Virus record (IMG/VR): IMGVR_UViG_3300006931_000029
Coordinates: 124,001 to 188,000 of that record
DNA length: 64,000 nucleotides
Direction: 5' to 3' (one strand)
In this document: piece after piece, positions 8,667-59,011 of the stretch
How positions within the stretch are numbered: the stretch's first letter is position 1
How the letters are laid out: the number at the start of each line of letters is the position of its first letter
Notes under the pieces: model-generated
What the model saw: the letters and a program-made list of their open reading frames with translations, nothing else
Told to the model about the DNA's origin: nothing
Databases searched by the model: none
Made by a program: the position numbers and the translations under genes

Positions 8667-8924
8667 ATGTCGGACGAACGCAAACTAGTCTCTGTCGATG
8701 AGATTGCCAAGCTACTTGCTAACGAAAACGGCGACTGGCCGTTTTCCGTCGAAGGTGACCAAGTCGAACTCGTCATCGAGAGCAACGTTTACACTCTTTC
8801 GAAAGAAGAATTCAGTCAACTCCAGGACGCGGCGAAGACGGTCAGTTGGAGAGAGTATTCGAACGGCGAACAGGTGGAGTCTGAAACTCCAGAAGCCCTG
8901 GTCGACCGGCTGCTAGACAGTTAA
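8667..8924 (+). CDS. acidic hypothetical protein with C-terminal PxxLVDxLL tag
   Basis: 85 aa ending ETPEALVDRLLDS. Confidence 0.7.
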   Translation: MSDERKLVSVDEIAKLLANENGDWPFSVEGDQVELVIESNVYTLSKEEFSQLQDAAKTVSWREYSNGEQVESETPEALVDRLLDS

Positions 8925-8992
8925 CAGCAGGCAAATAAGTTTTTTACTTTCTCGTTTACAATCGCGAGAAAAAGTATCCATGCTTGACTGTC

Positions 8993-9307
8993 ATGGATAA
9001 AACCTTCTTCCTATTCGATAGAAAAGAAATCGAGGGTTGGAAAGTACGCCTAGCGATGCTATGCCAATCCTGCCCTGTTCACGGTCGACACCCAGACTTT
9101 TGTCCTCTCCTCGAGCTTTCAAAATTAAAGCCTGGGGACCAGATAGACTTCATCAAAACGCTTCCTGTAGACGCTTTGAGGTACGTCTTGGCTAGACACG
9201 AAGTATGCATGGAAAACGAAGTTGGCAAATCGTTAAAAGACGCGTTAGTTAGTTCAAATGCTGACTCGTACGCGTTCTACGAATCGGTTCAAGTCGCTCG
9301 AGCATAA
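8993..9307 (+). CDS. Cys-containing hypothetical protein
   Basis: MDKTFF...CQSCP...CPLL...RHEVC; ATG lies inside an 8-bp inverted repeat. Confidence 0.65.
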   Translation: MDKTFFLFDRKEIEGWKVRLAMLCQSCPVHGRHPDFCPLLELSKLKPGDQIDFIKTLPVDALRYVLARHEVCMENEVGKSLKDALVSSNADSYAFYESVQVARA

Positions 9308-9467
9308 CCCTTCGAGAGAACAGAGGATTGCCGAGCTAGACCGTTGCACGTTATGGAATTACTGGCTAATCGAAGATGGCGAGCATTCGGCGGTGGATTC
9401 CAACAGAGTCCGAGAAAGGATCAACAGACTGTTGGATGCTAGGCTCTACCTTATGAAAAAGGTTTGA
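9258..9467 (+). CDS. hypothetical protein
   Basis: 69 aa filling the gap; start uncertain. Confidence 0.4.
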   Translation: MLTRTRSTNRFKSLEHNPSREQRIAELDRCTLWNYWLIEDGEHSAVDSNRVRERINRLLDARLYLMKKV

Positions 9468-9539
9468 GTTGAATTTGTTTCACTTTTTTTGTTTACATTG
9501 ACGAAGCCTTAGGCATTGTCGATGACGTTCTACTTCACC

Positions 9540-9803
9540 ATGAAATCCGAAAACTAGGTTCCTACCGTCGCCGATGAGGTGACGTTCCACTTCAACAAGG
9601 CCCATCTCACGGACTCCACGATTCCGATGTGGGTTCTCAAGTTGAAGGGTCAAACCTACTACGTTTCGCACGTTTCGTCCACGGCTCCATGGAGCACCAA
9701 GGAAACGCCTGACAACCCTGCTACCAAGGGTTCTCTCAAGTTCAAGAAGGTCGTGGTCTCAATCCACGACGGTGAAGCGGTCATCGAACCGATTGCCGCA
9801 TGA
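9540..9803 (+). CDS. conserved phage protein with in-frame amber at codon 6
   Basis: ATG AAA TCC GAA AAC TAG GTT... in frame with ORF 9579-9803 (FHFNK...IPMWVLK...PWSTKETPDNP.TKGS); ATG has the GTTCT upstream motif. Confidence 0.7.
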
Positions 9804-9812
9804 ACCAATTTT

Positions 9813-9908
9813 GGCAGAGTCGCCGAACGGTGAGCCGCAAGGCTCTTCAGGCCCGGGTGTCCGGAAGGAGACTCGTCTATGTAGGTTCGAATCCTACCTC
9901 TGCCTCCA
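9813..9908 (+). ncRNA. tRNA-derived RNA (Cys-like body) without an anticodon loop
   Basis: GGCAGAG/CTCTGCC-T-CCA acceptor, GTAGG-TTCGAAT-CCTAC T arm, GCC/GGC D stem with inserted GAGCC-GCAA-GGCTC hairpin, CGGGT/ACTCG stem capped by TCC-GGAA-GGA. Confidence 0.75.
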
Positions 9909-9910
9909 AT

Positions 9911-10041
9911 TTCCCTGTAGCTCAGAAGCTTTGCGAAGTCGCCCGCAGATCACGGGATGACGACGCAAATACCGTCGGCAACGACGAGGTAGAGCGGCCG
10001 GTTCTAACCGGAGTGTCGCTGGTTCAAATCCAGTCAGGGAC
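9911..10041 (+). ncRNA. tRNA-derived RNA (Asn-like body) with 62-nt D-loop insertion
   Basis: TCCCTG/CAGGGA acceptor, GCTC/GAGC D stem, CCGG-TTCTAA-CCGG arm, GCTGG-TTCAAAT-CCAGT T arm; insert at 9926-9987; no encoded CCA. Confidence 0.75.
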
Positions 10042-15136: not shown

Positions 15137-17371
15137 TTAAGTAGCGAACAGCCAGAGAAAACGAGGGTCGTTGCCGGCCACGCCCTGGAAACCTTGATTT
15201 CCCTGGAATCCTTGAAAGCCTTGCGTTCCCGTTGCGCCTTGAACTCCTTGAGGACCTTGGAAACCCTGATTTCCTTGCGATCCTTGGGAACCTTGAGAAC
15301 CCTGCGATCCCGCAGGTCCAGCGAACGCGAATGTGAAACAGACCTCGTCATTCAGCGAGAACGTTGTACCGGAATCGTCCTGGTACGTGACAGCGAATTT
15401 GCGATAGCCGGTCGCCGACACCACGCTTCCTGTGAAGATGAATGTTGCAAACGTGTTGACGTCTGCCTTCTTGTAGACCTTTATCGTGCCGCGGTTGGTA
15501 GACGATCCGAAGTTGTCCAACGAATCCAACCATCCTGTGACGTCAACCAACGACTCGTTGAGCAAGTCAACATAAAGGAACGTAACAGAAGCATAGGTCG
15601 CGTTGTTGAACTTCAGGAAGCCATCGCCAGGATCAGAGTCGGCTGTGTTGGTGTTGAAGAAGAAAATCTGCGTGTCGCCGCCGGCACTAGAATCACCGGA
15701 CGAACCTTGGAATCCTTGCGAGCCTTGAGAACCCGTCGAGCCCTGGTTGCCTATAGACCCTTGGAATCCTTGCGAGCCTTGAGCTCCTTGATTTCCTTGA
15801 GCGCCCGTGCTTCCCGCCGCTCCTTGCGCACCAGTCAATCCCTGGAAACCCTGGCGGCCCTGGAAACCTTGTGCGCCTTGTGCGCCGTCGTTGCCGGGCG
15901 CTCCGGTCAATCCTTGAACACCTTGGTTTCCTTGGTTGCCAGTGTATGTCCACGTGAACGCAATGTCATTACCAGCAGTGAACGTCGTGCCTGAAGAATG
16001 CTGGAACGTGACGGCAATCTTTCGATAACCCGTCGCCGTTGTGACGCTTCCAGTGACGATGAACGTAATGAAGACGTTTGCATCTGCGCTCTTGAACAAC
16101 TTGAGCACGCCGCGGTTCGTCGACGAGCCAAAGTCGTCGATAGCATCCAACCACGTTGTGATGTCGACGCCACCTTTGTTGAACGTGCTCGCAAAAATCT
16201 GGGTGACAGAAGCGTAGGTCGCGTTGTTGAAACGGACCTTGCCGCTACCCGGGTCTGCGTCGCTCGTTCCGGTGTCCCATGTGTAGATTTGTGTGTCGCC
16301 GCCAGAACCTTCGCTGCCCTGCGCACCTGTAGAACCCTGATTTCCTTGGAAACCCTGAGAGCCCGTAGTTCCAGTTGAGCCTTGGAATCCCTGATTACCC
16401 TGCGAACCTTGGAATCCTTGGAATCCCTGCGCGCCATCGGGAGGACCTTGGAATCCTTGGAATCCCTGACTGCCTTGTGATCCTTGTGCTCCCGCAGTTC
16501 CGGCTGAGCCTTGACTACCTTGCGATCCAGTCGACCCGGTCGCACCTTGAAAACCTTGAAAGCCTTGCGCTCCAGTTGATCCCGCCGCTCCTTGAAGTCC
16601 TTGGAAACCTTGGCGACCTTGGAATCCTTGCGAGCCTTGAGCACCCGCTGCGCCTTGCGAACCCTGAAATCCCTGCGCGCCATCAGGAGGACCTTGGAAT
16701 CCTTGAAAACCCTGTGCACCTTGAGAGCCAGTTGAACCTTGAAATCCCTGCGAACCCGTCGTTCCTGTCACGCCTTGGAAACCTTGACGACCTTGGAATC
16801 CCTGCGCACCTTGCGATCCCGTGGTTCCAGTTGAGCCTTGGAAACCTTGGTTGCCCTGCGCTCCGCTGATGCCATAAGTGAAGATCGCGACTCCCGTGAA
16901 AACAGGAGACGGCGCTGCTGAGAAGACCGTGCAAGTTAGCGTGACGGTCGAATTGATGTTGTCGAACGAAACGTTAGTGATGCTGTAGACAACGTGTGTC
17001 GAAGAGTTCGTCTCGAGATAGATGACAAAGTGAGACGGTGCCAATCCCGAAAACCAACTCGAAGCGTTCTGACCCGCAAGGTTCGTTTGATTTGCGACAA
17101 TGGCTGTTGCGAGTTGAGGGCTCGCATTGTTCAATCGGAAAGTTCCAGTCGTTGGATTTCCAGTCGTCAGCGACGAATAGGTGTAGCGCTGCGACGGCCC
17201 GCCTGCTGTTCCTGTCGGCCCTTGAAAACCCTGAAATCCTTGAAAACCCTGAGCGCCCTGATTCGCGTCCGCGTAATCTTTGTTGACTGCGTCTTTGCCA
17301 TCAACCGGTGCACTCAAACCAGCCAACCGCTGGTTTTCGAGCGTATTGCCTCTTTGAATGATCGGAACCAT
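15137..17371 (-). CDS. collagen-like tail fibre protein
   Basis: N-terminal LSAPVDGKDAVNKDYAD knob motif, G-x-Q triplet tracts (QGFQG), three repeated globular domains. Confidence 0.85.
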   Translation of the reverse strand: MVPIIQRGNTLENQRLAGLSAPVDGKDAVNKDYADANQGAQGFQGFQGFQGPTGTAGGPSQRYTYSSLTTGNPTTGTFRLNNASPQLATAIVANQTNLAGQNASSWFSGLAPSHFVIYLETNSSTHVVYSITNVSFDNINSTVTLTCTVFSAAPSPVFTGVAIFTYGISGAQGNQGFQGSTGTTGSQGAQGFQGRQGFQGVTGTTGSQGFQGSTGSQGAQGFQGFQGPPDGAQGFQGSQGAAGAQGSQGFQGRQGFQGLQGAAGSTGAQGFQGFQGATGSTGSQGSQGSAGTAGAQGSQGSQGFQGFQGPPDGAQGFQGFQGSQGNQGFQGSTGTTGSQGFQGNQGSTGAQGSEGSGGDTQIYTWDTGTSDADPGSGKVRFNNATYASVTQIFASTFNKGGVDITTWLDAIDDFGSSTNRGVLKLFKSADANVFITFIVTGSVTTATGYRKIAVTFQHSSGTTFTAGNDIAFTWTYTGNQGNQGVQGLTGAPGNDGAQGAQGFQGRQGFQGLTGAQGAAGSTGAQGNQGAQGSQGFQGSIGNQGSTGSQGSQGFQGSSGDSSAGGDTQIFFFNTNTADSDPGDGFLKFNNATYASVTFLYVDLLNESLVDVTGWLDSLDNFGSSTNRGTIKVYKKADVNTFATFIFTGSVVSATGYRKFAVTYQDDSGTTFSLNDEVCFTFAFAGPAGSQGSQGSQGSQGNQGFQGPQGVQGATGTQGFQGFQGNQGFQGVAGNDPRFLWLFAT

Positions 17372-17682
17372 TAGATGGCAATGAAGGAGACAGTTGCACT
17401 GAGGGAACTGTCGGCGCTAGCAATGAGATAGATCGAATCCCCAGCGGAAAGAAGGATTTTTTCAGTCGAAAGGAACAGGCTGTCGTACGCTCTCATCGTC
17501 CGGCTTTTGATGATTGTGGTCGTCGGACTTGCAGCGTTTCCCTGTTTGATGACGTGAACATCCACCGTTCGCTCGGCATTTACATAGTTGCAAACCATAA
17601 TGTTCACAACCGCGTAGTTCAACCCCGCCGGGACGGTCAGAAGCGTTGTTCCCGCTGCTGCGATCAGGTTCTGTAAGATCAT
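17371..17682 (-). CDS. small beta-rich virion structural protein
   Basis: TTLLTVPA...NIMVCN...ILLSAGDSI pattern; coupled to the fibre gene. Confidence 0.65.
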   Translation of the reverse strand: MILQNLIAAAGTTLLTVPAGLNYAVVNIMVCNYVNAERTVDVHVIKQGNAASPTTTIIKSRTMRAYDSLFLSTEKILLSAGDSIYLIASADSSLSATVSFIAI

Positions 17683-20219: not shown

Positions 20220-20343
20220 GTTGCCCCTAAATACGCAGGTCAAGCAGAGTGTAGTTAGCGTCATGGGCACCATCCACGAAACCAATCGTCGTCGCGCATC
20301 GGCTCTGGCAAGCCAAATGTGACCTAGCGCTTTACCCGCCGCC

Positions 20344-20724
20344 ATGCAACCACCCGATCAAGAAGAACGGCTGAACGCTCCGCCACCTTACCGGCCGAGC
20401 ATCGATAGGATTTTCCTTGACAAACTAAGCGAGTCCGATCGCTACCTGGTCACGAAACTGGATTCCGTGGACCAGCGTATTGAGTGGTTAATCGTGGTCG
20501 CTCTCTCGAGCCACAACCGAGGCATCGACCTAGCGTCTTCTGTCAGAAAGTTAGAGGAACGTGTCGCCAGATTGGAACAGGCGAACGACCCAGAAGACAA
20601 AAGTATGCTCAAGTGGATTCGAGAGAATGTCATGGCTCCTGCTAAGATGGTCGGTTGGTTGATCGCCACCGGGATTGGAGCCCTGATCGTTGTTCTTCTA
20701 GAAAAATACTTTGGCAGCAAGTGA
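20344..20724 (+). CDS. coiled-coil protein with C-terminal TM (holin/XhlA-like)
   Basis: VRKLEERVARLEQ coiled coil; MVGWLIATGIGALIVVLL TM helix. Confidence 0.6.
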   Translation: MQPPDQEERLNAPPPYRPSIDRIFLDKLSESDRYLVTKLDSVDQRIEWLIVVALSSHNRGIDLASSVRKLEERVARLEQANDPEDKSMLKWIRENVMAPAKMVGWLIATGIGALIVVLLEKYFGSK

Positions 20725-21149
20725 ATTCACTCACCGACTACGTCAATCGGCTTCTCCGTCCTTCCAGAATCCTACTGGTTGAGGACGACGAAGCAGTTTG
20801 CGCTGTCATAGAGTCGCTAGCCAAGAAGTTCAACTGCGAGATGATGACCGTCCATACGGCGAAGGACGCGCTGAGAGAATCTCTCGAAACCAAGTACGAT
20901 CTCGTCCTGCTCGATTACCAGTTGCCGGACGGCAACGGTGTTGAAGTGTTTAAGACAATCCGGGCCAAGTCATGTGACGTGCCGGTTTGTATCGTGACAG
21001 GCTTTCTATCCGAACACCTGATCGATCAAGTGAAGGATATTGGATTCGCAGTCTTCGTGCAGAAGCCGAAGGACTTGACGATGAAGAATCTGATCAACAT
21101 CTTCATGACGTTCGGCATCAAGCCGAACCCGGCTGCAGAAGCCGGATGA
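20721..21149 (+). CDS. stand-alone response-regulator receiver domain
   Basis: GTG start overlapping the upstream TGA; ILLVEDD, YDLVLLDYQLPDGNG, CIVTG, QKP. Confidence 0.92.
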   Translation: MNSLTDYVNRLLRPSRILLVEDDEAVCAVIESLAKKFNCEMMTVHTAKDALRESLETKYDLVLLDYQLPDGNGVEVFKTIRAKSCDVPVCIVTGFLSEHLIDQVKDIGFAVFVQKPKDLTMKNLINIFMTFGIKPNPAAEAG

Positions 21150-21526
21150 ACCTAGCCGAACATGTCGTAGATGTTTTGCTTGAAGCCGTGCCGTCGTCAC
21201 TTCGAGTGAACCTAAGGTTTGCGCTTGATGGCCACGACGACGAGTTGGTTCTGCCCGGACTTGTGTCTGTTGAGAGCGCTCCGAAAAATACCTACGGTGG
21301 AGCATGGCGTTTGACGGTCTTCGACGCAAAGAAAACCATGGGTTTACTCCACATCAACTTCGAGTTGGATGGACAACCAACTCTAGAGAAGGTTCAACAG
21401 GTGCTTGGGCCAGACCATGACGCGTACGAATACTTGCTCGGAGACATCAACGATTGGCTCGAATCGTCTTCCGGAGAATTTGCCACTGACTTCTCCGTGG
21501 AAGGCGTGTCCGCCCCACCCGCTTGA
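21146..21526 (+). CDS. acidic protein with N-terminal VVDVLLE tag
   Basis: ATGA-coupled start MNLAEHVVDVLLEA. Confidence 0.7.
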   Translation: MNLAEHVVDVLLEAVPSSLRVNLRFALDGHDDELVLPGLVSVESAPKNTYGGAWRLTVFDAKKTMGLLHINFELDGQPTLEKVQQVLGPDHDAYEYLLGDINDWLESSSGEFATDFSVEGVSAPPA

Positions 21527-21530
21527 CCAA

Positions 21531-21878
21531 TCAGGTGGGACCCCTTTGAGGGTCAAGTCTCGAGGTGCTTACTCATAAGTGTCAGCGCGGAGAATCGAAA
21601 AAGAAAACGGTGGACGCGAGGGAGGAGTTCGGGTTTGCTAGTTGTTTCCTAAGCTGGGCAGGACCGCTTCACTGTCCCGTTCAACGCCTTGCGGCGAAGA
21701 CCCATGTTGCTTTTTCCATCCCCACAGAACCGCTGCTCAAGCCCCTAAAGCGGGGCTCTCATAACGATTGCCGAACTACCAGAGCAGTCTCCGTCGAGAC
21801 GGGAAGCAGTAGTTCATTGGCTCAGCAAAAAGGCTGACTCCGTCGAGTCAACACTCTCGGCCACCGGAAAAACGCCCC
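21531..21878 (-). ncRNA. candidate structured non-coding RNA (unrecognised)
   Basis: About 350-nt gap between convergent genes, with many hairpins and a long-range closing helix; GCAA tetraloop reads on the minus strand. Confidence 0.55.
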
Positions 21879-21887
21879 ATTAGGCTT

Positions 21888-22403
21888 CTACGACCTCTCA
21901 GCCGCTTCCGCAGAACCAGGCGTTTGTTCAAGAGAACGCTGTTCAGAATCGCCAGATTTCAACGTCAGGTTTGTTCCCCTGAGAGCAGCAATGCCGGACT
22001 CCCGGGCCAAATCTTGCAGCGTAAACAGGTAATTCTTCGCCAATTCGTAAGGGTCTGCGCTCATGAATCCGTACATCGGCGAGTACGACCGCCGATCCGA
22101 GTACAGCTCAAGGGAGAAGGCGAGACCGTTGTGGTAGCTGCCGAGCGAGTCAGATTGTCCACGAGCAAACACCCTGACGTTGCGAGCGTCGTAAACGAAC
22201 GACTCGATTCTTGCGTCGTTGTCCCTGATGATAACGCCGTCTCCTCTCACGAAGATGGCAATTCCTTTGCCCATTTCACCGCAGGAAAAACCCATCTTGC
22301 GAAGGATTTTCAGCGTAACCCACCAAACACTGGACGTGTCATCGGCAGGTTCCTTTGGTGCCAGTGCAAGCAATGAATTTCTGTTTACGAGTTCCAATTC
22401 CAT
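21888..22403 (-). CDS. hypothetical protein
   Basis: 171 aa; GTTCT 10 nt upstream. Confidence 0.65.
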   Translation of the reverse strand: MELELVNRNSLLALAPKEPADDTSSVWWVTLKILRKMGFSCGEMGKGIAIFVRGDGVIIRDNDARIESFVYDARNVRVFARGQSDSLGSYHNGLAFSLELYSDRRSYSPMYGFMSADPYELAKNYLFTLQDLARESGIAALRGTNLTLKSGDSEQRSLEQTPGSAEAAERS

Positions 22404-22419
22404 ACGTAAGGTGAGAACA

Positions 22420-22824
22420 ATGAAGCCTGCGAATCTAGTGGATCAAATGCTGGAGACCGACAGTGAGCCTGCGCGTGAGCCAACTCCTAGTTTGACGGTT
22501 CCAGACGCTGGCATGTCTCGGTATCCGAAGGATGAAGAGGCCACTCGCAACGCTGTCGAGAAAGTCGGGGATGGACAACAGCCGGATGAATTTTTCGTGT
22601 CGATCGGCGACGAGTTCTACGAGGACGAACCTGAACAATCCGGCGAGAGCTACAGCATCGGCCAGTTTGCCGATCCGAAGGAAGCCGAGAAGATGTTCAA
22701 CAACGTCGAGCTGAACGGCGCAGAAGGACCGCGCTGGGTTTCAGTCGAGAATCGTCTCAAAGGCCTGATCAAGCAACGCTACCTGAAGAAGGTGGTGAGC
22801 TATCAGGAGGAGACACGGGACTAG
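22420..22824 (+). CDS. acidic protein with N-terminal PANLVDQMLE tag
   Basis: ATG 22420; ends TAG TAG. Confidence 0.7.
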   Translation: MKPANLVDQMLETDSEPAREPTPSLTVPDAGMSRYPKDEEATRNAVEKVGDGQQPDEFFVSIGDEFYEDEPEQSGESYSIGQFADPKEAEKMFNNVELNGAEGPRWVSVENRLKGLIKQRYLKKVVSYQEETRD

Positions 22825-23089
22825 TAGGAGCAGTGCCGGACGAGAACTGAGTCGGGTGTTCCTGATCGGCGCCGTCGTAGTTGGCGCTGACCAATTCGCG
22901 CAGCGAGAAGGCAACGAACGGGCCTTTGAACTGACGAAGGTCTTCTCTCGATTGAACTAGTTCGGCTTGCTTGGCAGTCAAGACGAGAATCCGTTTACCA
23001 GATCGAAACTCTTCGACAAACGCAGCGGCACGCTCAGGTTTGAACGCCGTTGCGCCTGACTCACCGAGTAACTGCTTGATGAGCGTCAT
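22769..23089 (-). CDS. tagged small protein (LIKQLLGE)
   Basis: ATGA-coupled. Confidence 0.65.
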   Translation of the reverse strand: MTLIKQLLGESGATAFKPERAAAFVEEFRSGKRILVLTAKQAELVQSREDLRQFKGPFVAFSLRELVSANYDGADQEHPTQFSSGTAPTSPVSPPDSSPPSSGSVA

Positions 23090-23373
23090 AGCACGATCCA
23101 GTCTACTCCTAATCTTTCCATCGTGTCTAAGAGTTTGGAGGCTTCGGCTGAGAATTCAGCGACGTCGACTTCAACCATCTGCAGCGTGCCGACTTCGATG
23201 GTAGCGCCATCGTCGACGTTGAGATAATCTCTCAAGCCGCGCGACAGACCGACATCTTGAGCTTTGATTGCTTTGTAGATTTTCGGGCCGTTGCTGCCTG
23301 GATTTCCAACTTGAGCGGCATCGACAGGCGCTTCGCTCAACATCTGATCCACGATTGTCTTGGCGTTGTTCAT
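23086..23373 (-). CDS. tagged small protein (IVDQMLSE)
   Basis: ATGA-coupled. Confidence 0.7.
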   Translation of the reverse strand: MNNAKTIVDQMLSEAPVDAAQVGNPGSNGPKIYKAIKAQDVGLSRGLRDYLNVDDGATIEVGTLQMVEVDVAEFSAEASKLLDTMERLGVDWIVL

Positions 23374-23654
23374 GAGAATCCGGTTACGTCTGTGATGACC
23401 TTGGCAAATTCAGGACGCGCGCAAACTTTTGCCGCGGCATTTTTCAATGCCTGAGCGAGGTTGAATCGGTCGCTGGTCTCAGCGTTGGGCGTCATCACGA
23501 TGTCGATACCTTCGAGTTCAGTACCGTCAAGGCTGATGCTAACAGTCATGATGCGACCGCGTCGTGAAAGCTGGCGCGAGCGTCGGCCCTTATTGGCATC
23601 GCCCTCGGGTCCTTCTTCGTTGAGAAGCTTGTTAACTGTGTCAGAAGGTTTCAT
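23370..23654 (-). CDS. tagged small protein (PSDTVNKLLNE)
   Basis: Probable start MKPSDT at 23654, overlapping the upstream TGA. Confidence 0.7.
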   Translation of the reverse strand: MKPSDTVNKLLNEEGPEGDANKGRRSRQLSRRGRIMTVSISLDGTELEGIDIVMTPNAETSDRFNLAQALKNAAAKVCARPEFAKVITDVTGFS

Positions 23655-24169
23655 GGGTGTCCCGGCCTTGGCGGCCAAACTGGTTGAGCTTTCTGTTGTT
23701 GCAGCGGAGTTCTGCCTTCTCCGTATCCTAGCATGAAGCAAGCGAGCCGAGCGTACCGTCTTGCTTCTTCCGGGTTCTTGACTAAGTCGTTGGCTTTATC
23801 GATGCAGAGTGTCCAACACTCCTCCTTCATGCGAGCGTCGTACTCGGGCGAGTCTGGGTCTAAGTCTTCTGGTGCTACGTCGCCGAGGTATTGTTCGACC
23901 TCGTCCTTGATTCTTTTGACGATTGGATTTTCTCCACGCTCGGTGATCGAATCTTCGCTCAGCAGTTGCTCAACCACGCCGCTTGGCGTGAGGTCAGGAA
24001 GTACTTTGAAGAAGTCGAAATCAGAGCCGTCTTTTCCGTCAGAAACAGGTAGCTCAACGATTTCGCCGGGCTTCACGTCGCGAGGATGGCATTCACGCTC
24101 GCCTTCCCTAGTCTTGACCACAACGTGGTCATAACGGTCAAGAAGGTCTTTGTGCCGGATCATCCGCAT
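23651..24169 (-). CDS. acidic protein with internal PSGVVEQLLSE tag
   Basis: 172 aa; TGTTTACA 34 nt upstream. Confidence 0.7.
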   Translation of the reverse strand: MRMIRHKDLLDRYDHVVVKTREGERECHPRDVKPGEIVELPVSDGKDGSDFDFFKVLPDLTPSGVVEQLLSEDSITERGENPIVKRIKDEVEQYLGDVAPEDLDPDSPEYDARMKEECWTLCIDKANDLVKNPEEARRYARLACFMLGYGEGRTPLQQQKAQPVWPPRPGHP

Positions 24170-24224
24170 AGTTTACCTACAGACTAACAGAACACGGCAT
24201 TTTGTAAACAGATTCTTCCCAGCA

Positions 24225-25536: not shown

Positions 25537-25823
25537 GTCCGTATCAGAAAGCTATTGCCGCCGTCGTTCTCAACACGGCATTTTCCGTTGAGGAGCAGGA
25601 CTACTATTGCGGCCAGCGAAATAGCGGCTGCAAGTGTCCGGTCGCTTTAGCCATCCGCCGGACTTTGGACACAAGTTCAACCGTGTCAGTCTGTGCTGCC
25701 ACAATCCGAATCGACTCCGTTTGGTTTGTGACACCGAAGGAGGTCGACGCCTACATTAAGGCGTACGACAGACGAGAACCGAATTGTTTTCTGCTCGATT
25801 TCAGAATCAAAGAAGTGGCTTAA
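25533..25823 (+). CDS. hypothetical protein
   Basis: GTGA-coupled; CKCPVALAI motif. Confidence 0.6.
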   Translation: MSPYQKAIAAVVLNTAFSVEEQDYYCGQRNSGCKCPVALAIRRTLDTSSTVSVCAATIRIDSVWFVTPKEVDAYIKAYDRREPNCFLLDFRIKEVA

Positions 25824-26515
25824 GCGTTCGCCCAGTCGAGGACGATCTTGGCCGCGGTCAAGAGACTCTCAGGTGGAATCTTCAAAGGATCGGCGTCGGC
25901 AAATTGGCCGAACGTGTCTTGCAGCTCGTCAGGAAGATTGATGGTGCCGCCGGTTTCATCGGTCATGCTGGCTCCCCAGAAACCGTCTGCCGTGCCGATG
26001 TCGAGAGTACCTAGCTTGTTCGGGCAGCTCAGGTAGCCGGGATATTCGTAGGAACACTTGACGCCATTCTCATTAAAGAATCTCTCACACTCGAGACCGA
26101 GCTGTTGAAGCGCGTTGTTCTCGTCTTCACTGAGAAGGGTTTCGACCACGTCGGATGGCGCGATAGTTTCACCTGTTGCGCGGTCGATGTCGAGTGTCCG
26201 CATGTTGCCGGACAACTTCAGCGTCTTGCGTTCAGGAGCTGGAGCCGATAGTAAATCCCAAATCTCGTTGGCATCGGTATTGATTGAACCGTCGACTTCA
26301 TCCCGAGAAGCGTCAAGATGCTGTAGCAGACCTTTCATCAACCGTTGGCGCTCGGATTGAACTCCACGATCAAAATTCAGATGAGACAAGATGGCGTTCG
26401 CAAGGCGCCCAATCTCGACTTCCATTCCACTTTCTTGATCGCGAGTGCGGCCACCGAGTTCGTTGTAGTCACGAATCTCCTTGTTGACCCACATCCTGTC
26501 GATCTTGCCGGCCAT
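25820..26515 (-). CDS. two-domain acidic protein with internal PSDVVETLLSE tag
   Basis: 231 aa in operon. Confidence 0.7.
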   Translation of the reverse strand: MAGKIDRMWVNKEIRDYNELGGRTRDQESGMEVEIGRLANAILSHLNFDRGVQSERQRLMKGLLQHLDASRDEVDGSINTDANEIWDLLSAPAPERKTLKLSGNMRTLDIDRATGETIAPSDVVETLLSEDENNALQQLGLECERFFNENGVKCSYEYPGYLSCPNKLGTLDIGTADGFWGASMTDETGGTINLPDELQDTFGQFADADPLKIPPESLLTAAKIVLDWANA

Positions 26516-26517
26516 CG

Positions 26518-26832
26518 TTAAGGAAGTTTGGCGATGAAGTCGGCAACGTCCCTGACAGGGATGAAATCGTTGCCGTACTCAAAGTCGGGCGCAACGGCCT
26601 TCACGAACTCAAACGTTCCGTCAGGATTGGCCATGACGTGGCAACTGATCTCTTCGCCGGTTTTGAGTTTGATTCCGATCTCGGCGACTTGCTCCGGTCC
26701 CATTACGTCGATGTGGGTAATGTCGCCAACACCAGTTCTGGCAAACGCGCCACGGAGTTCAGCAGTGAACGCCTCGATAGCGTCAGCTTCGCTCAGCATG
26801 TTTTCAACCATCTGCAGGGGCGTGATTTTCAT
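26518..26832 (-). CDS. tagged acidic protein (PLQMVENMLSE)
   Basis: ATGA-coupled. Confidence 0.7.
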   Translation of the reverse strand: MKITPLQMVENMLSEADAIEAFTAELRGAFARTGVGDITHIDVMGPEQVAEIGIKLKTGEEISCHVMANPDGTFEFVKAVAPDFEYGNDFIPVRDVADFIAKLP

Positions 26833-27194
26833 TCTTCGATGAGACGGCTAACAACTTGCCTTGGAGTGGATTCTCGGCGTAAAGGACGGCTAGGGCGACT
26901 GAAGTTCGTGAAAAATTTTCCGGCACTCCGGTCGGCTTTTGCTTGTTGGATCGCCGACTGGATTTCCTCAACTCCAGCCGTTTCTTTATCCACAAAGAAG
27001 GTCAAGCTGTCAACGAAGTGCCGACCGGCAGTCGAGTCCAGATATTCCTTCGCCTTCAGCGGATCGCCACCGAGGACGTCGATCAGGTAGTTGTAGATGC
27101 CGAGCACCTGAGCGCGGGAGACGTTGCCCCAATTGGCAAGCGTGCCGTAAAATCCCCAGTCGGTGTTGATGTCGTCGGCGGTGAACTGTGCCAT
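26829..27194 (-). CDS. protein with C-terminal PRQVVSRLIEE tag
   Basis: 121 aa downstream of the TGTTTACA at 27256. Confidence 0.7.
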   Translation of the reverse strand: MAQFTADDINTDWGFYGTLANWGNVSRAQVLGIYNYLIDVLGGDPLKAKEYLDSTAGRHFVDSLTFFVDKETAGVEEIQSAIQQAKADRSAGKFFTNFSRPSRPLRRESTPRQVVSRLIEE

Positions 27195-27268
27195 GTGATA
27201 AATATGAGCTCAGGTCTTGAGGCTCGTGACCCATACAACACAACCCAGCTGAGTTTGTAAACAAAAAT

Positions 27269-27805
27269 TTACTTCACCAACTCCAGATTCTCGTGGTCGA
27301 GAATGATGCCGTACGCGCCTGGCAGTTTGCTGTCCATTGGGTTGTGACCCAACTCTGAGATGTTCACAGAATACCGTCCATCTTCGTAGGCGTCACGAAT
27401 CACGCCGATCTTTCCGTTGCTGTCTCCTCGTTGGTTAGACTTCACTCTCGTGCCTGGAACAAGCTGAGTGAAACCCGACTCTTTGAACCAGACAATAGAC
27501 GCCTGGCGAACGGCTTCTCTGAGGTAGGAAGATGTTCGATCCATCACTTCAACCAGAGCAGAGTCGGCATCCCATCCGTCGTGCTCGAGCTCTCGAGCGA
27601 GACGATAGCCGTCGTCGGTGGTGGAACCCTTGATCGCACCCGTTAGCTGGTCGATGACGCTGTCCCGCTCTTCAGTTTCTTGCTCGTAGTCAGTCGAGTC
27701 ACCGTTTTGGTTTAACCACTCGATGACGTCAGGAAGCAGACGCTCAACGGCGGTCTTGATGATCGCTGAGTCGTTGACGGTGGGACGTTTCGTCAGTGTC
27801 GGCAT
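27269..27805 (-). CDS. hypothetical protein
   Basis: 178 aa. Confidence 0.65.
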   Translation of the reverse strand: MPTLTKRPTVNDSAIIKTAVERLLPDVIEWLNQNGDSTDYEQETEERDSVIDQLTGAIKGSTTDDGYRLARELEHDGWDADSALVEVMDRTSSYLREAVRQASIVWFKESGFTQLVPGTRVKSNQRGDSNGKIGVIRDAYEDGRYSVNISELGHNPMDSKLPGAYGIILDHENLELVK

Positions 27806-27807: not shown

Positions 27808-28179
27808 TTAGGTATGAACTAAGGGTTCGAGGTTGAATGACTTCAAGGCAGCAAGAGCTTCGTCCACCTTCTCGTTAGGAACAACGACCACGATAGTCTT
27901 GGTGGTTTGGGTTTTCTTCCACTCGATGAAGACCGTCTCGGTGTTGCGATCGCCATTGTACGGATCGGGACCTTTTCCCTGCCACGCGACGTAACCGCCG
28001 AAGTCGTTTTCGATGACGAATTCTCGGTCCGCTTTTCCTGGTTTCACGAACCACGATCCGTCTTCCTTTGCTCCCCACAATTCTGCCCAAAGATCGTCGT
28101 TGTAGTCCTCGAAATAAAAACTGTCTCCGAGCTCATTGATGAAACGACAAAATTCGATGGCTGTTGTGGGTGTGGACAT
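27808..28179 (-). CDS. hypothetical protein
   Basis: 123 aa. Confidence 0.65.
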   Translation of the reverse strand: MSTPTTAIEFCRFINELGDSFYFEDYNDDLWAELWGAKEDGSWFVKPGKADREFVIENDFGGYVAWQGKGPDPYNGDRNTETVFIEWKKTQTTKTIVVVVPNEKVDEALAALKSFNLEPLVHT

Positions 28180-50317: not shown

Positions 50318-50587
50318 ATGAAACCGATCCAACTCGTCGAGGCTCTGCTAGGTGACACGCAGCCAGTGATCGTGCAAGATCGTGTGATCCCGAACGGCGA
50401 CATGGTTTGTCCTCACTGCAAGGAAAGCATCCACGAAAAGGGACTAGCGTACCGAGATGGTCAACACATCCACGGTGCCTGCGGCGGTACGGTGACTCTT
50501 CCTCCACCATCAGCGACCGAGCTGAAGTGGCTCGACCAATTCAAATCACAGGTCTCGAGTCTGAAGAATCCGCCGGCGAATATCTGA
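50318..50587 (+). CDS. zinc-ribbon protein with N-terminal PIQLVEALLGD tag
   Basis: CPHC...HGACG. Confidence 0.65.
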   Translation: MKPIQLVEALLGDTQPVIVQDRVIPNGDMVCPHCKESIHEKGLAYRDGQHIHGACGGTVTLPPPSATELKWLDQFKSQVSSLKNPPANI

Positions 50588-56578: not shown

Positions 56579-56841
56579 GACGCAGATAACGTTCGAAACT
56601 TCTTCTCGTTTGCCAGTATCAACCGGAGTTTGGCCTGCGTTTCAAGATAGTGCTTGATGGTTGCAACCGTCCAACCGAAGACAGTCGCCTGTTCCCAGAG
56701 AGCCATCAAGATGTGCACGTGCTGGTTTGCATTGTGCACGGACATCCCTGAGCAGTAAAGGTTTACCTGCCGGAGAAGTTCGTTAGGATGCTCAAAGTAG
56801 TTGTCCACCTCACTCGGGTTCTTTGCGCTCTCTTCGTGCAT
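56575..56841 (-). CDS. hypothetical protein
   Basis: 88 aa. Confidence 0.5.
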   Translation of the reverse strand: MHEESAKNPSEVDNYFEHPNELLRQVNLYCSGMSVHNANQHVHILMALWEQATVFGWTVATIKHYLETQAKLRLILANEKKFRTLSAS

Positions 56842-57019
56842 CGTCAGACTTATCGGTAACTATCGGAGTGACCGCGATTCCATGCATGTCGATTAGCGCC
56901 ACGCCATCGTCCACCATGAAGGCGTGGTCGTAGCCAGCTGCCTTCAACTTGTTAGCGATCTCGTCGAAGGCTGGTTTGCTGATCTCAAGTCTGGCGAAGG
57001 TGTGAGTGATCCTCAACAT
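56810..57019 (-). CDS. conserved small phage protein
   Basis: THTFA.LE.S..AFDEI..KL.AAGY.HAF...IDMHGIA; start 31 nt after TGTTTACA. Confidence 0.65.
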   Translation of the reverse strand: MLRITHTFARLEISKPAFDEIANKLKAAGYDHAFMVDDGVALIDMHGIAVTPIVTDKSDDARRERKEPE

Positions 57020-57076
57020 AGCGATGGACAGAACTTGGTCTGACGCGCTTGTAAACAAAAACTTGTAGACAACGTG

Positions 57077-57547
57077 TTAATAGCCGCGCAGTTCGTCTCG
57101 AACTTCCATCAACAAATGGCCCAACTTATTTTGGCCAACGCCGTCGCACACGCCCCAAAAGTGGTCGCTCCACCAATTTTTCTCTTCAAGAAATTTCTGC
57201 CCCGTGTCCAGCAGCGCTCGCCTCATCTGTTCGTTGGCGTACTTGGCCCGAAGCACGTCGCGCATGACGTCGACCTTCCGGGTCTCCCAATCGGCGGTAA
57301 GCTTTGCCGTCTGCCCTTTGGTCTTTGCCTGGAATGGTGAGCAGCCCTTGAAGTAAGACCGAGCATTCGGCCAATGATCTTCCTTTGGCCACTTCGCCGC
57401 CTGGTAGGCGTTCTCGCTGGACGGAAAGAACTCGCCCTCGTAGTGGAGGGGAGTCGGAAACATGTTCGACAACCAGCGATACGGGCCGAAGAACCCTCGA
57501 ATCACCAGGTCGTTGTGGACGTACTCGAAGTCAGGTGGGATTCTCAC
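57077..57547 (-). CDS. NADAR (YbiA-like) ADP-ribosylguanine/N-glycosidase family protein
   Basis: YRWLSNMFP, FPSSENAYQAAK, WETRKVDVM...KY, LLDTG, WSDHFWGV...GQNKLGHLLMEVR. Confidence 0.9.
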   Translation of the reverse strand: MRIPPDFEYVHNDLVIRGFFGPYRWLSNMFPTPLHYEGEFFPSSENAYQAAKWPKEDHWPNARSYFKGCSPFQAKTKGQTAKLTADWETRKVDVMRDVLRAKYANEQMRRALLDTGQKFLEEKNWWSDHFWGVCDGVGQNKLGHLLMEVRDELRGY

Positions 57548-57564
57548 CTGACAGAGAACGAAAA

Positions 57565-57795
57565 CTAGTCCTCAATCAATTTGCTGACAAGAGATTCGGC
57601 AGCTTTCCTGCCGGTCTTGATCTTGCGCCACTTCGATTGGGCGGGATCGTCATTGGTGAACATCACGCGCTTCACGCGGCCATCGGCCAATCGAATGCGC
57701 ACGCCATCGTCTTTGTCGTGGCCGATCAAACCGACCACCTTGCCGACGCCAAATTCTGGATGTTTCACGTCGTCACCGACTTGGACCATGAGCAT
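57565..57795 (-). CDS. stand-alone UvrD/PcrA C-terminal Tudor-like domain with C-terminal LVSKLIED tag
   Basis: VGDDVKHPEFGVGKVV...VRIRLADGRVKRV. Confidence 0.65.
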   Translation of the reverse strand: MLMVQVGDDVKHPEFGVGKVVGLIGHDKDDGVRIRLADGRVKRVMFTNDDPAQSKWRKIKTGRKAAESLVSKLIED

Positions 57796-57833
57796 GATGA
57801 CTAATTACTCTGTCAGGAAACGGGTGTAAACGC

Positions 57834-58517
57834 CTAACTGACGCCGGCGTGGAGTTGGCGCATCTGATCCGGCGAGAGCCAGTGGTATCCGAGTTGGGTT
57901 CTTGCGAAAGACATCGGATGGTTCAGGGTTTCCGGCGCCATCGTGTGGAGCAGGAAGGTGTCGTACATCAAGACGTCACCGATGGCCCGCCACCAATAGC
58001 CGATCGTCACGTCCGCGTAACCGTTCCAGGTTGGGTTTGGATGGTTGCCAATGTAGTCGAACAGGCGTTTAACCAGCGCGGCGCTGATGGCAAATCCCGC
58101 ACCTCCGGCGTAGTACTGGACGTGGATGTCGGTCTTCTCACCGTGCATGCTGTCTCTGTACTTGTCCTTGTCCGGTGAAAACCAGAATGGCCAGCCAGTT
58201 GCGATCGACCGTCCTGGTTGCCGACCCACCATTACCTCCTCGAGATGGAGGACCAGGTTGTTGACGAGCACGTAGCCATCATCATCGGCGAAGTAGTACC
58301 AGTCTTGGGTCGGATCGTAGTTGCTCCTGTCTTTGAAGAAGGCAACGTACTTCAACGCCATGTTGTCGTAGCCGATGGCCGTGCCATAGCCGACCTTCTC
58401 GGGACCGGGTTCGTCGCTGAGGAAGACGAAGTTTTGTCCCTTCAACCAAGTCTCTCGCTGGGCTTTCTGCCGCTCAAGGTACTTTTCGCAAGTCAGTAGG
58501 ACGTATTTGATCTTCAC
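57834..58517 (-). CDS. GT31 (Fringe/galactosyltransferase-like) glycosyltransferase
   Basis: QRETW, WYYFADDDGYVLVNNL, YYAGGAGFAIS, DVTIGYW, YHWL. Confidence 0.85.
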   Translation of the reverse strand: MKIKYVLLTCEKYLERQKAQRETWLKGQNFVFLSDEPGPEKVGYGTAIGYDNMALKYVAFFKDRSNYDPTQDWYYFADDDGYVLVNNLVLHLEEVMVGRQPGRSIATGWPFWFSPDKDKYRDSMHGEKTDIHVQYYAGGAGFAISAALVKRLFDYIGNHPNPTWNGYADVTIGYWWRAIGDVLMYDTFLLHTMAPETLNHPMSFARTQLGYHWLSPDQMRQLHAGVS

Positions 58518-59011
58518 GGCTGCTTGCGTTTGCGCGTGGGTAAAACGTATCCCTGAGCTTTAGCAAAATCTCTCAGCTGGTTCGCCGCCGCTTCAATCTC
58601 TGCATCGGTCACGCCGTCGTCGGTGTCGTCCCAAATGGCGGAAATTTGTTGCTGGTAATACTCGGTGTCTGAGAAGTCTACCACCGATTCTCCGGTCTTC
58701 AAACTGTCCAGATTGACCTTGGAAAAGATACGAAATAGCTCCTCGACTGGAGGAAGTTTTCTCTTCTCCGGAGCGTTATTCGACGCCCATGCCTTCAGCT
58801 TATCGATCTCGTCGGCGCCATAAGCTTGGTCTTCGTCTTCTTGCTGAATCGAATTCCAGTCATCGTCGTCCAGCGCCAAGATAAGGCGTTTGAGTTCGGC
58901 CTCGTCCTTGATCCTCACGCCTAACTCGATCGCCAACCGATGAGCCAAGCTCAGAATCGGATCGATGTGGTTCTCCGCAAGCAGCTTCTCGACGAGGTCT
59001 TCTGGTTTCAT
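58514..59011 (-). CDS. acidic protein with N-terminal PEDLVEKLLAE tag
   Basis: Start 31 nt after TGTTTACA. Confidence 0.7.
   Translation of the reverse strand: MKPEDLVEKLLAENHIDPILSLAHRLAIELGVRIKDEAELKRLILALDDDDWNSIQQEDEDQAYGADEIDKLKAWASNNAPEKRKLPPVEELFRIFSKVNLDSLKTGESVVDFSDTEYYQQQISAIWDDTDDGVTDAEIEAAANQLRDFAKAQGYVLPTRKRKQP

What the first reader, a model, noticed from the sequence alone, without database searches (positions are those of the whole stretch)
8667..59011. Shared amphipathic peptide tag in about 13 unrelated small proteins: candidate capsid-packaging or maturation signal
Seen: consensus (P)xx[LIVM][VI][DENSK]x[LM][LI]x[ED]. N-terminal copies: 21146 HVVDVLLE, 22420 PANLVDQMLE, 23089 LIKQLLGE, 23373 TIVDQMLSE, 23654 PSDTVNKLLNE, 26832 PLQMVENMLSE, 50318 PIQLVEALLGD, 59011 PEDLVEKLLAE. 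Internal copies between domains: PSGVVEQLLSE in 23651-24169 and PSDVVETLLSE in 25820-26515. C-terminal copies: 8667 PEALVDRLLD, 26829 PRQVVSRLIEE, 57565 ESLVSKLIED. Nine cluster at 21.1-27.2 kb, and the rest of each protein is unrelated and mostly acidic. Known: T4 internal proteins carry a short N-terminal capsid-targeting sequence, and gp21 cleaves at [ILV]-x-E. Inference: a modular, position-independent address label that loads diverse cargo into the head for injection.
Basis: partly seen in the sequence, partly recalled or inferred. Interest (0 to 1): 0.75.

Follow-up and report, generated by a model that had tools for sequence, protein, structure and literature searches.

The report
Shared targeting peptide on phage proteins
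A 225-kb soil phage puts the same 11-residue amphipathic peptide on about a dozen otherwise unrelated small acidic proteins; it is most likely a T4-style address label that loads them into the head, but no virion data exist to prove it.

Summary
The motif is real. The strict pattern P-x-x-[LIVM]-V-[EDN]-x-[LM]-L-x-[ED] hits 8 times against 0.9 expected. A weight matrix finds 11 copies at 24 bits or more, then a gap to 14 bits. Nine strong copies lie in the window and three lie just outside it. Codon third positions vary, so the protein is what is conserved. Nine of 12 strong copies start within the first 9 residues (P = 3.5e-8). Carriers share nothing but the tag. Orthologues keep the tag almost invariant, and AlphaFold2 places it in a low-confidence linker: a short linear motif. 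Relatives (major capsid protein, MCP, 65-82% identical) carry variants at N-terminal, internal and C-terminal positions.

The genome encodes a T4 gp21-type (S77) prohead protease. The tag's conserved positions (V5, L/M8, L9, E/D11) have the same spacing as the four mapped positions of the T4 capsid targeting sequence (4, 7, 8, 10). The tagged genes follow GTTTAC-type promoters, as do T4 ipI, ipII and ipIII.

Best reading: a capsid-targeting and processing tag (confidence about 0.4). Main rival: a docking helix for another hub (0.3). The cargo is acidic, whereas T4 internal proteins are basic. This would be a new variant of a known kind.

The parts
58514..59011 (-). 165-aa acidic orphan with an N-terminal tag MKPEDLVEKLLAE (tag codons 58970-59005)
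   Evidence: 31 bits in the matrix scan. In-frame stop 4 codons upstream of the ATG. Orthologues keep M1, P3, L6, V7, L10, L11 invariant. pI 4.5.
59015..59055 (-). Promoter-like site TGTTTACA-N17-TAnnnT, 38 nt upstream of the 58514-59011 gene
   Evidence: The motif is enriched about 10-fold in intergenic DNA; the site is listed.
50318..50587 (+). 89-aa protein with an N-terminal tag MKPIQLVEALLGD (50324-50359), followed by a Cys/His-rich segment
   Evidence: 26.5 bits. Stop 2 codons upstream of the ATG.
26829..27194 (-). 121-aa protein with a weak C-terminal copy PRQVVSRLIEE; first gene of an operon that continues into two strongly tagged genes
   Evidence: Core score 7.3 bits, at noise level. 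ATGA overlap with the next gene.
27225..27270 (-). Promoter-like site TTTTTGTTTACA-N17-TAnnnT upstream of the 27194-25820 operon
   Evidence: genome 151263.
26518..26832 (-). 104-aa acidic protein with an N-terminal tag MKITPLQMVENMLSE (26785-26820)
   Evidence: 27-31 bits. pI 4.4.
25820..26515 (-). 231-aa two-domain protein with an internal tag PSDVVETLLSED (26123-26158) in the inter-domain linker
   Evidence: 29-31 bits. The tag is invariant in orthologues at 41-86% identity, with indels right after it. AlphaFold2 gives folded domains 1-94 and 130-231, with the tag in a stretch of pLDDT below 50.
23651..24169 (-). 172-aa protein with an internal tag PSGVVEQLLSED (23951-23986)
   Evidence: 29-31 bits. 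Only its C-terminal domain has a homologue in relative G003.
24172..24216 (-). Promoter-like site CTGTTTACA, 41 nt upstream of the 24169-22769 operon (three strongly tagged genes plus one weak copy)
   Evidence: genome 148210.
23370..23654 (-). 94-aa protein with an N-terminal tag MKPSDTVNKLLNE (23613-23648); its start overlaps the upstream stop (ATGA)
   Evidence: 25-28 bits.
23086..23373 (-). 95-aa acidic protein with an N-terminal tag MNNAKTIVDQMLSE (23329-23364)
   Evidence: 24-25 bits. pI 4.3.
22769..23089 (-). 106-aa protein with a weak N-terminal copy MTLIKQLLGE
   Evidence: 9.0 bits, at noise level.
22420..22824 (+). 134-aa acidic protein with an N-terminal tag MKPANLVDQMLE (22426-22461), preceded by a GTTTAC promoter-like site at 22382
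   Evidence: 26-28 bits; promoter site; pI 4.4.
21146..21526 (+). 126-aa protein with a weak N-terminal copy ...HVVDVLLEA
   Evidence: 8.6 bits, at noise level.
8667..8924 (+). 85-aa acidic protein with a C-terminal tag PEALVDRLLDS (8889-8921), which ends one residue before the stop
   Evidence: 13.9 bits on the 8-residue core. TAA stop with no read-through frame. It lies downstream of the promoter-like site at 8014 and the tRNA at 8581-8656.
57565..57804 (-). Small ORF with a weak C-terminal copy ESLVSKLIED
   Evidence: 9.3 bits, at noise level.

Best explanation
The tag is a short amphipathic docking helix: hydrophobic face L4, V5, L/M8, L9; acidic residues at 6 and 11; usually started by a Pro and followed by an acidic, Pro/Gly-rich linker. 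Most likely it works like the T4 capsid targeting sequence (CTS).

Proposed mechanism: the tag binds the assembling prohead core, here the scaffold-like C-terminal half of the protease protein, so whatever is fused to it is enclosed in the shell. The gp21-type protease then cuts after the acidic residue that follows [LM]-L-x. This releases the cargo inside the head, to be injected with the DNA. Internal copies arise when an upstream domain fuses to a tag-plus-domain module. C-terminal copies would target without being removed.

Shown here: the motif, its enrichment and its N-terminal bias; protein-level conservation; its linear-motif character; the S77 protease; the positional match to the T4 CTS; the promoter parallel.

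Inferred: the binding partner, the cleavage, packaging into the head, and injection.
For: - The motif is discrete and enriched. Nine of 12 strong copies sit at the extreme N-terminus, giving putative propeptides of 12-16 residues. T4 propeptides are 10-19 residues (PMC9026906).
- The genome encodes one detectable protease, Peptidase_S77, at 61 bits against a cut-off of 27. It is PHROG 'head maturation protease' and aligns to T4 gp21 structure 5JBL at E = 1.3e-8, with His (EHP) and Ser (SSRG) in register. Its gene lies directly upstream of the MCP gene, and the protein carries a C-terminal coiled-coil/Lys-Ala-Pro-rich half.
- T4 N-termini read from NC_000866: IPII/IPIII MKTYQEFIAE, gp24 MAKINELLRE, Alt MELITELFDE, gp22 MLKEQLIAE. 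In IPIII, residues 4 and 7 target and residues 8 and 10 direct processing (PMC9026906). The tag's invariant or near-invariant V5, L/M8, L9 and E/D11 have the same 3-1-2 spacing.
- The MCP N-terminus keeps G-[IVL]-x-E-[GK] at about residue 40 in roughly 18 relatives. The protease itself starts with PRILLED.
- The cargo is hypervariable. Only 1 of 15 carriers has any homologue in three relatives with 65-70% identical MCP. T-even internal proteins are likewise diverse apart from a conserved CTS (PMC3012670).
- T4 ipI, ipII and ipIII are each preceded by a GTTTAC-type promoter and have no TATAAATA within 160 nt. Six of the 8 transcription units carrying strong tag copies follow TTGTTTACA-N17-TAnnnT.
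- In relatives, tagged gene arrays lie directly downstream of the MCP gene (L077, L036, L026/L028).
- Orthologues conserve the tag more than anything else, and AlphaFold2 leaves it unstructured.
Against: - There are no proteomic or experimental data, and the phage is uncultured (rhizosphere and soil metagenomes).
- Nine of 13 carriers have pI below 5.0. T4 IPI-III have pI 8.9-9.5 and are described as highly basic (PMC8442874). Acidic proteins are less obvious companions for packed DNA, and are typical of early host-takeover proteins.
- Some copies have Asp or no acid at the presumed P1 position (LLGD, LLDS, LLGH in relatives). In T4, Asp10 blocks processing (PMC9026906).
- C-terminal copies cannot act as removable propeptides.
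- The tag matrix does not recognise T4's own CTSs. The best T4 N-terminal hit is gp22 at 8 bits, so the likeness is one of pattern, not of homology.
- The scaffold-like region is not notably charge-complementary.
- In L077 a strong terminator separates the MCP gene from the tagged array.
Confidence: 0.4

Rival explanations
1. The tag is a docking motif for a different hub: a host protein (for example RNA polymerase, a chaperone or a nucleoid protein) or a phage early protein. It recruits a set of early host-takeover or anti-defence proteins to one place in the infected cell and has no link to the capsid.
For: - The tagged genes sit in arrays of small orphan genes behind promoters of the class that also precedes the helicase, ligase and AAA+ genes. 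That class is absent upstream of the MCP, portal and sheath genes.
- The cargo is strongly acidic.
- The tag works at N-terminal, internal and C-terminal positions. C-terminal copies end 0-2 residues after L-L-x, so the terminal carboxylate could stand in for the acidic side chain. That suits binding rather than cleavage.
- The tag is conserved but predicted to be disordered.
Against: - No candidate partner was identified.
- T4 internal-protein genes show the same promoter type, so early-type transcription does not tell the two readings apart.
- This reading does not explain the strong N-terminal bias, the constant 12-16-residue distance from Met1, or the match to the T4 CTS spacing together with an S77 protease.
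Confidence: 0.3
2. The tag is a degron or an unfoldase-recognition tag. It marks early proteins for timed removal by a host AAA+ protease, or by the phage AAA+ ATPase at 4004-5866.
For: The phage encodes a 620-aa AAA+ protein that matches a PHROG named 'ATP-dependent protease' and Pfam AAA, behind the same promoter type. Terminal peptide tags are the usual form of degron (general knowledge).
Against: - The AAA+ protein has no peptidase domain, and the genome has no ClpP or Lon peptidase domain.
- Internal copies flanked by folded domains are unusual for degrons.
- An acidic amphipathic helix is unlike the known ssrA-, MuA- or lambda-O-type signals (from memory).
Confidence: 0.07
3. The tags bind one another (or a small adaptor), so that the carriers assemble into one heteromeric complex or condensate.
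For: The tag is an amphipathic helix with an i, i+1, i+4, i+5 hydrophobic face. It occurs at the C-terminus of one gene product and the N-terminus of the next (26829 then 26832; L077 array), which recalls docking-domain pairs.
Against: Eight residues is very short for a stable helix-helix contact. No heptad continuation is seen. The net acidic character of all copies would make them repel each other.
Confidence: 0.08
4. The tag is a relic of common ancestry, a DNA-level element, or chance.
For: The genes are clustered, and clustering is compatible with local duplication.
Against: - There is no similarity beyond the tag.
- Third codon positions vary.
- Shuffled-proteome and six-frame controls exclude chance.
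- The tag is the best-conserved segment in two orthologue families and is found across a clade of relatives.
Confidence: 0.03

Closest known systems
T4 capsid targeting sequence (CTS) of internal proteins IPI/IPII/IPIII, with the similar N-termini of gp24, Alt and gp22
   Same: Both are short N-terminal peptides (10-19 aa in T4, 12-16 aa here) on otherwise unrelated, hypervariable small proteins. Both have hydrophobic residues at -7, -4 and -3 and Glu at -1 relative to the (presumed) cut. Both phages encode a gp21/S77 protease. In both, the genes follow GTTTAC-type promoters (PMC9026906, PMC3012670, PMC8442874).
   Different: There is no sequence homology. Here there is a leading Pro and a fixed Val. 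There are at least 12 carriers per genome instead of 3-5. Internal and C-terminal copies exist. The cargo is acidic, not basic. Function has not been tested.
P1 DarB N-terminal capsid targeting signal (Dar anti-restriction system)
   Same: An N-terminal signal is sufficient to send a heterologous protein into a myovirus head, and the cargo is an injected anti-defence protein (PMC9024508).
   Different: In P1 it is a single large cargo with a stepwise dependence on DarA/Hdf, not a motif repeated across many proteins. P1 has no S77-type cleavage consensus in its signal.
Long propeptides of phiKZ / SPN3US / 201phi2-1 head and ejection proteins
   Same: These are jumbo phages with a gp21-like protease that cuts many internal head proteins after Glu. 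The propeptides are thought to target those proteins to the prohead (PMC5694885, PMC7411985).
   Different: Those propeptides are 100 residues or longer and are not a common short motif. The cleavage motif there is S/A/G-x-E or A-x-E rather than L-x-E.
Encapsulin cargo-loading peptides and microcompartment encapsulation peptides (recalled from memory, not tested)
   Same: Both are short terminal peptides on flexible linkers that load diverse cargo into a protein shell. They can be N- or C-terminal. Encapsulin shells share the HK97 fold with phage capsids.
   Different: No encapsulin or BMC (bacterial microcompartment) shell gene is present in this genome. The consensus sequences differ, and those peptides are not coupled to a protease.

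Membership tests
T4-type capsid targeting sequence | A short peptide at the extreme N-terminus of otherwise unrelated proteins | tested here: met
   Nine of 12 strong copies start at residues 3-6, P = 3.5e-8. The carriers are unrelated to one another. Three copies are internal or C-terminal.
T4-type capsid targeting sequence | The peptide ends in a gp21-type site (hydrophobic-x-Glu), with targeting residues 3 and 6 positions upstream | tested here: met
   V5, L/M8, L9 and E/D11 are conserved. The spacing equals that of T4 IPIII residues 4, 7, 8 and 10 (PMC9026906). Two of 11 copies have Asp or a shifted Glu.
T4-type capsid targeting sequence | The phage encodes a gp21-family prohead protease | tested here: met
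   PF03420 at 61 bits against a cut-off of 27; 5JBL at E = 1.3e-8 with His and Ser aligned.
T4-type capsid targeting sequence | The peptide is sufficient to carry a foreign protein into the head and is then cleaved off | not testable with these tools
   This needs a packaging assay or virion mass spectrometry. The phage is known only from metagenomes.
T4-type capsid targeting sequence | Sequence homology to the T4 CTS | tested here: not met
   The tag matrix gives at most 8 bits on T4 N-termini. The resemblance is in pattern only, so this is 'works like', not 'is a member of'.
T4 internal proteins (cargo class) | Basic, DNA-associated small proteins | tested here: not met
   Nine of 13 carriers have pI below 5.0. 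T4 IPI-III have pI 8.9-9.5.
Peptidase S77 (the protease presumed to act on the tag) | HMM match over the curated threshold, with catalytic His and Ser | tested here: met
Encapsulin / BMC cargo peptides | A cognate encapsulin or BMC shell protein encoded alongside | tested here: not met
   PF04454 and PF00936 are absent from the genome.
Degron for a phage-encoded AAA+ protease | A peptidase partner (ClpP or Lon domain) in the genome | tested here: not met
   PF00574 and PF05362 are absent. The AAA+ protein has only an AAA domain.
Short linear motif (general) | Conserved in orthologues, lying in a disordered region, flanked by variable linkers | tested here: met
   Alignments A2 and A3; pLDDT below 50 over residues 117-129.

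The most novel reading that the evidence does not exclude
A whole clade of uncultured soil jumbo phages uses one portable 8-11-residue peptide as a general cargo-loading label. The peptide works at N-terminal, internal and C-terminal positions and spreads by gene fusion. Through it, each phage loads a dozen or more rapidly changing acidic effector proteins (about 4-5% of its genes) into the virion. This would be by far the largest and most modular CTS repertoire known, and a ready index of injected anti-defence candidates. Alternatively, the same label addresses a so-far unknown intracellular hub.
Probability: 0.35. Interest if true: 0.7.

Novelty: new variant of a known kind. Interest (0 to 1): 0.55.

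Why it matters
- **An index of injected proteins.** If the tag is a head-loading signal, it marks from sequence alone the proteins these phages inject. Such proteins are prime candidates for anti-defence and host-takeover factors, and they are otherwise unrecognisable orphans.
- **How widespread the CTS principle is.** It would show that the T4 CTS principle operates, with a different sequence, in a distant S77-protease clade. It would also show that the tag tolerates internal and C-terminal placement.
- **Use in engineering.** A tag of this kind is useful for engineering protein delivery by phage capsids.
- **If the rival is right.** If the tag instead docks to another hub, it defines a new shared interaction motif of early phage proteins and offers a handle to find that hub.

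Tried and rejected
- **DNA-level element.** Rejected, because codons vary at third positions.
- **Stop-codon read-through.** I asked whether this could make the C-terminal copies internal, prompted by the tRNA with anticodon CTA just upstream of ORF 8667. Rejected: the stops are TAA/TGA and no frame continues.
- **IMG/VR scan with a degenerate DNA pattern for MKP-x-x-L-V-E-x-L-L-x-E.** It gave only 4 out-of-frame chance matches, so the Pro-containing form is specific to this lineage.
- **Short-alignment search of relatives with the genome search.** It missed most copies. I fetched the whole genomes and scanned them in Python instead.
- **Cargo function.** PHROG and Pfam on 10 carriers, Pfam on 10 larger tagged proteins of relatives, and an ESM Atlas search gave no informative result.
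- **Late-promoter motif.** I tried to define one so as to time the tagged genes. Only a second, unclassifiable upstream motif [AC]GTTCT[TG] emerged.
- **Charge complementarity** between the scaffold-like domain and the acidic cargo. Not found.
- **Contigs of four other metagenome runs laid on the cluster.** The fragments were identical, with no joints at the tags.
- **Tag matrix on 60 kb of T4.** It does not detect the T4 CTSs. The only strong hit is inside prohead core protein gp68, which I treat as an anecdote.

Full report
**Setting.** The window is bases 124001-188000 of a single 224,954-bp viral contig with direct terminal repeats, rated complete. GC content is 53.5%. It is a contractile-tailed jumbo phage:
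- portal at genome 45610-47448
- sheath at 70512-72599
- baseplate wedge at 20121-22433
- collagen-like fibres
- family-B-like DNA polymerase, DnaB- and UvsX-like proteins, and an NAD-dependent ligase

No isolated phage is close; the portal is at most 25% identical to any. IMG/VR holds a large clade of relatives with MCP 65-82% identical, several of 200-238 kb. The same sequence occurs in at least five rhizosphere or soil metagenome runs.

- The strict regex from the finding gives 8 hits in a greedy ORF set, against 0.92 +/- 0.99 in 200 shuffles. With the Pro it gives 9 hits against 0.5.
- A weight matrix run over every six-frame segment gives 11 hits at 24-32 bits, and the next hit is 13.7 bits. 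The set is therefore discrete.
- Eight of these 11 are in the window. With the C-terminal copy of ORF 8667-8924 (13.9 bits on the 8-residue core), the window holds nine strong copies. The other three lie outside it, in ORFs at genome 76688-77071, 122693-123010 and 123178-123528.
- The copies at 21146, 23089, 26829 and 57565 score 7-9 bits. About 11 hits at 8 bits or more are expected in a shuffled proteome, so I count these four only as possible members.
- Third codon positions differ freely between copies. The peptide, not the DNA, is conserved.
- Gene starts are well defined by nearby in-frame stops or by ATGA overlaps.
- Nine of the 12 strong copies begin within the first nine residues (P = 3.5e-8).
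- The carriers align with each other only over the tag. None matches a Pfam or PHROG family.
- Nine of 13 carriers have pI below 5.0, against 16% of ORFs of similar size.

**Nature of the tag.** The alignment of the 11 copies gives P-x-x-L-V-E-x-L-L-x-E. V5 and L9 are invariant, P1 is present in 10 of 11, position 8 is Leu or Met, and position 11 is Glu or Asp. In a helix this puts residues 4, 5, 8 and 9 on one face. The tag is regularly followed by an acidic, Pro/Gly-rich stretch.

Two orthologue families show how it behaves.
- *The 231-aa protein (25820-26515).* Relatives at 41-86% identity keep P-x-D-V-V-E-x-L-L invariant, while indels accumulate right after it. One relative has a different C-terminal part. 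AlphaFold2 on that alignment gives two folded domains (1-94 and 130-231, pLDDT 70-90), with the tag in a stretch of pLDDT below 50. Strong conservation without predicted structure is the signature of a short linear motif that folds on a partner.
- *The 165-aa protein (58514-59011).* The same conserved C-terminal domain occurs in three arrangements. In two relatives (90-94 aa) the tag is directly attached at the N-terminus. In this phage a 70-residue insert follows the tag. In a 268-aa relative an 88-residue domain lies upstream, which makes the tag internal.

The evolutionary unit is therefore tag plus domain. Internal copies arise by fusion.

**The tag is a feature of the clade.** I fetched three whole relatives and scanned them.
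- G003 has at least nine copies. They include C-terminal ...ADELVRRLID, N-terminal M..ESKADQLVRALLEED, and a cluster at 62-67 kb that ends at a 1921-aa ORF.
- G002 has several copies, including a 522-aa ORF with three.
- G004 uses a variant, [LA]-I-D-x-L-L-x-E.
- In L077, L036 and L026/L028, arrays of tagged genes (N- and C-terminal copies) lie just downstream of the MCP gene. In L077 a strong terminator lies between them.
- The relatives mostly lack the Pro.
- C-terminal copies end 0-2 residues after L-L-x.

**Evidence bearing on function.**

1. *Protease.* The only protease domain found is Peptidase_S77, at 61 bits against a cut-off of 27. It forms the N-terminal third of a 547-aa protein whose gene lies directly upstream of the MCP gene. 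It aligns to T4 gp21 (5JBL, E = 1.3e-8) with His and Ser in register. Its C-terminal part is coiled-coil and Lys-Ala-Pro-rich, that is, scaffold-like. ClpP, Lon, HK97-type S78, encapsulin and BMC domains are all absent.
2. *T4 N-termini.* I read these from NC_000866: IPII/IPIII MKTYQEFIAE, gp24 MAKINELLRE, Alt MELITELFDE, gp22 MLKEQLIAE. The literature states that the 10-residue CTS is sufficient for packaging. Residues 4 and 7 govern targeting, residues 8 and 10 govern processing, and Asp10 blocks processing but not targeting (PMC9026906). T-even internal proteins are diverse apart from the CTS (PMC3012670). The four conserved tag positions have exactly this 3-1-2 spacing, and they end in the same hydrophobic-x-Glu.
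3. *Other head proteins.* The MCP N-terminus keeps G-[IVL]-x-E-[GK] near residue 40 across relatives. The protease begins with PRILLED.
4. *Promoters.* The one strongly enriched intergenic motif is T-rich-TTGTTTACA-N16-17-TAnnnT, about 10-fold over background. It precedes six of the eight transcription units that carry strong tag copies. It also precedes the helicase, ligase and AAA+ genes, but not the MCP, portal or sheath genes. At first sight this argues for early, non-structural proteins. However, T4 ipI, ipII and ipIII are each preceded by a GTTTAC-type promoter and have no TATAAATA within 160 nt, whereas alt, 24 and 22 have TATAAATA. The promoter class therefore does not separate the hypotheses, and it in fact parallels T4.

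**Weighing the readings.**

*For the T4-like reading:* the N-terminal bias with a constant short distance from Met1; the embedded hydrophobic-x-Glu; the S77 protease; the hypervariable cargo; and the promoter parallel.

*Against it:*
- The cargo is acidic, while T4 internal proteins have pI 8.9-9.5.
- Some copies have Asp or no acid at the presumed P1 position.
- C-terminal copies could not be removed.
- The resemblance to T4 is one of pattern, not homology. The tag matrix gives at most 8 bits on T4 N-termini, and its only strong T4 hit is inside core protein gp68.
- No experimental data exist.

*Alternatives.* A docking helix for another hub explains the positional freedom and the acidity at least as well. 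It does not explain the N-terminal bias or the coincidence with the CTS map. A degron is less likely, because no peptidase partner is encoded and folded domains flank the internal copies. Chance, shared ancestry and a DNA element are excluded by the controls.

My estimates are: capsid targeting plus processing 0.4; other hub 0.3; heteromeric assembly 0.08; degron 0.07; relic or chance 0.03; the remainder unknown.

**Comparison with what is known, and novelty.** Functionally the closest systems are the T4 CTS, then the N-terminal signal of P1 DarB (PMC9024508) and the long propeptides of phiKZ-like phages (PMC5694885). The tag is not a sequence member of the T4 CTS family. It differs in consensus, in copy number (at least 12 per genome), in positional freedom and in the charge of its cargo. 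I therefore rate it as a new variant of a known kind, conditional on the function. The motif itself, and its spread across a clade of uncultured soil jumbo phages, appears undescribed in what I could search.

Noticed in passing
window 8581-8656 (+): tRNA with anticodon CTA (amber-suppressor type; ARAGORN calls it tRNA-Pyl), directly upstream of tagged ORF 8667. TAG still ends 65 of 357 predicted ORFs, and none of the tagged ORFs needs read-through.
   Followed up: partly
window 9813-9908 (+): tRNA-Glu(TTC) that is unusually long at 96 nt, possibly with an insertion or intron.
   Followed up: no
genome-wide; in the window e.g. 165, 5928, 8014, 9490, 11957, 27263, 36291, 43205, 59049: About 40 intergenic copies of T-run-TTGTTTACA-N16-17-TAnnnT, a T4-early-like promoter. 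Two back-to-back palindromic pairs lie at genome 90174/90180 and 199454/199459.
   Followed up: partly
genome-wide; in the window e.g. upstream of 17679-20345, 27808-28179, 29411-30043, 60996-61427: A second motif, [AC]GTTCT[TG], lies 12-26 nt before about 20 start codons of both replication and structural genes. Its class (middle or late promoter, or a translation signal) is undetermined.
   Followed up: partly
window 20655-21149 (+): A phage-encoded response-regulator receiver domain (PF00072, E = 2.5e-19) at the edge of the tagged gene cluster.
   Followed up: no
window 4004-5866 (-): A 620-aa AAA+ ATPase (PHROG 'ATP-dependent protease') with an uncharacterised 345-aa N-terminal region and no peptidase domain.
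   Followed up: partly
genome 91784-93427 (-) (L005:11784-13427): The S77 prohead protease is fused to a long scaffold-like C-terminal region. That region ends in repeats of the type EAKKPAAD, and no separate scaffold gene lies between it and the MCP gene.
   Followed up: partly
L126:3024-3449 (T4 gene 68): T4 prohead core protein gp68 contains NTIVENMLDDE, which scores 18.5 bits with the tag matrix. It is the only strong hit in 60 kb of T4.
   Followed up: partly
L132:426-1979 (relative G002, 198925-200478): A 517-aa ORF with three tag copies, one N-terminal and two internal. Each precedes a separate segment, the first with a DxDGT (HAD-like) motif. There is no Pfam match.
   Followed up: partly
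genome 88696-89345 (-), downstream of the MCP gene: Two adjacent small ORFs both begin with MSIV[RQ]K[IL], which may be another shared N-terminal peptide. They have no homologues in relatives.
   Followed up: partly
window 15137-17371 (-) and 43243-44568 (-): Collagen-like repeat tail-fibre proteins. A third lies outside the window at genome 42894-44513.
   Followed up: no
window 25820-26515 (-), residues 96-115: A second invariant linear segment, R-K-T-L-K-L-S-G-N-M..T.D.D-R, lies just upstream of the internal tag in all orthologues and is also predicted to be disordered.
   Followed up: no
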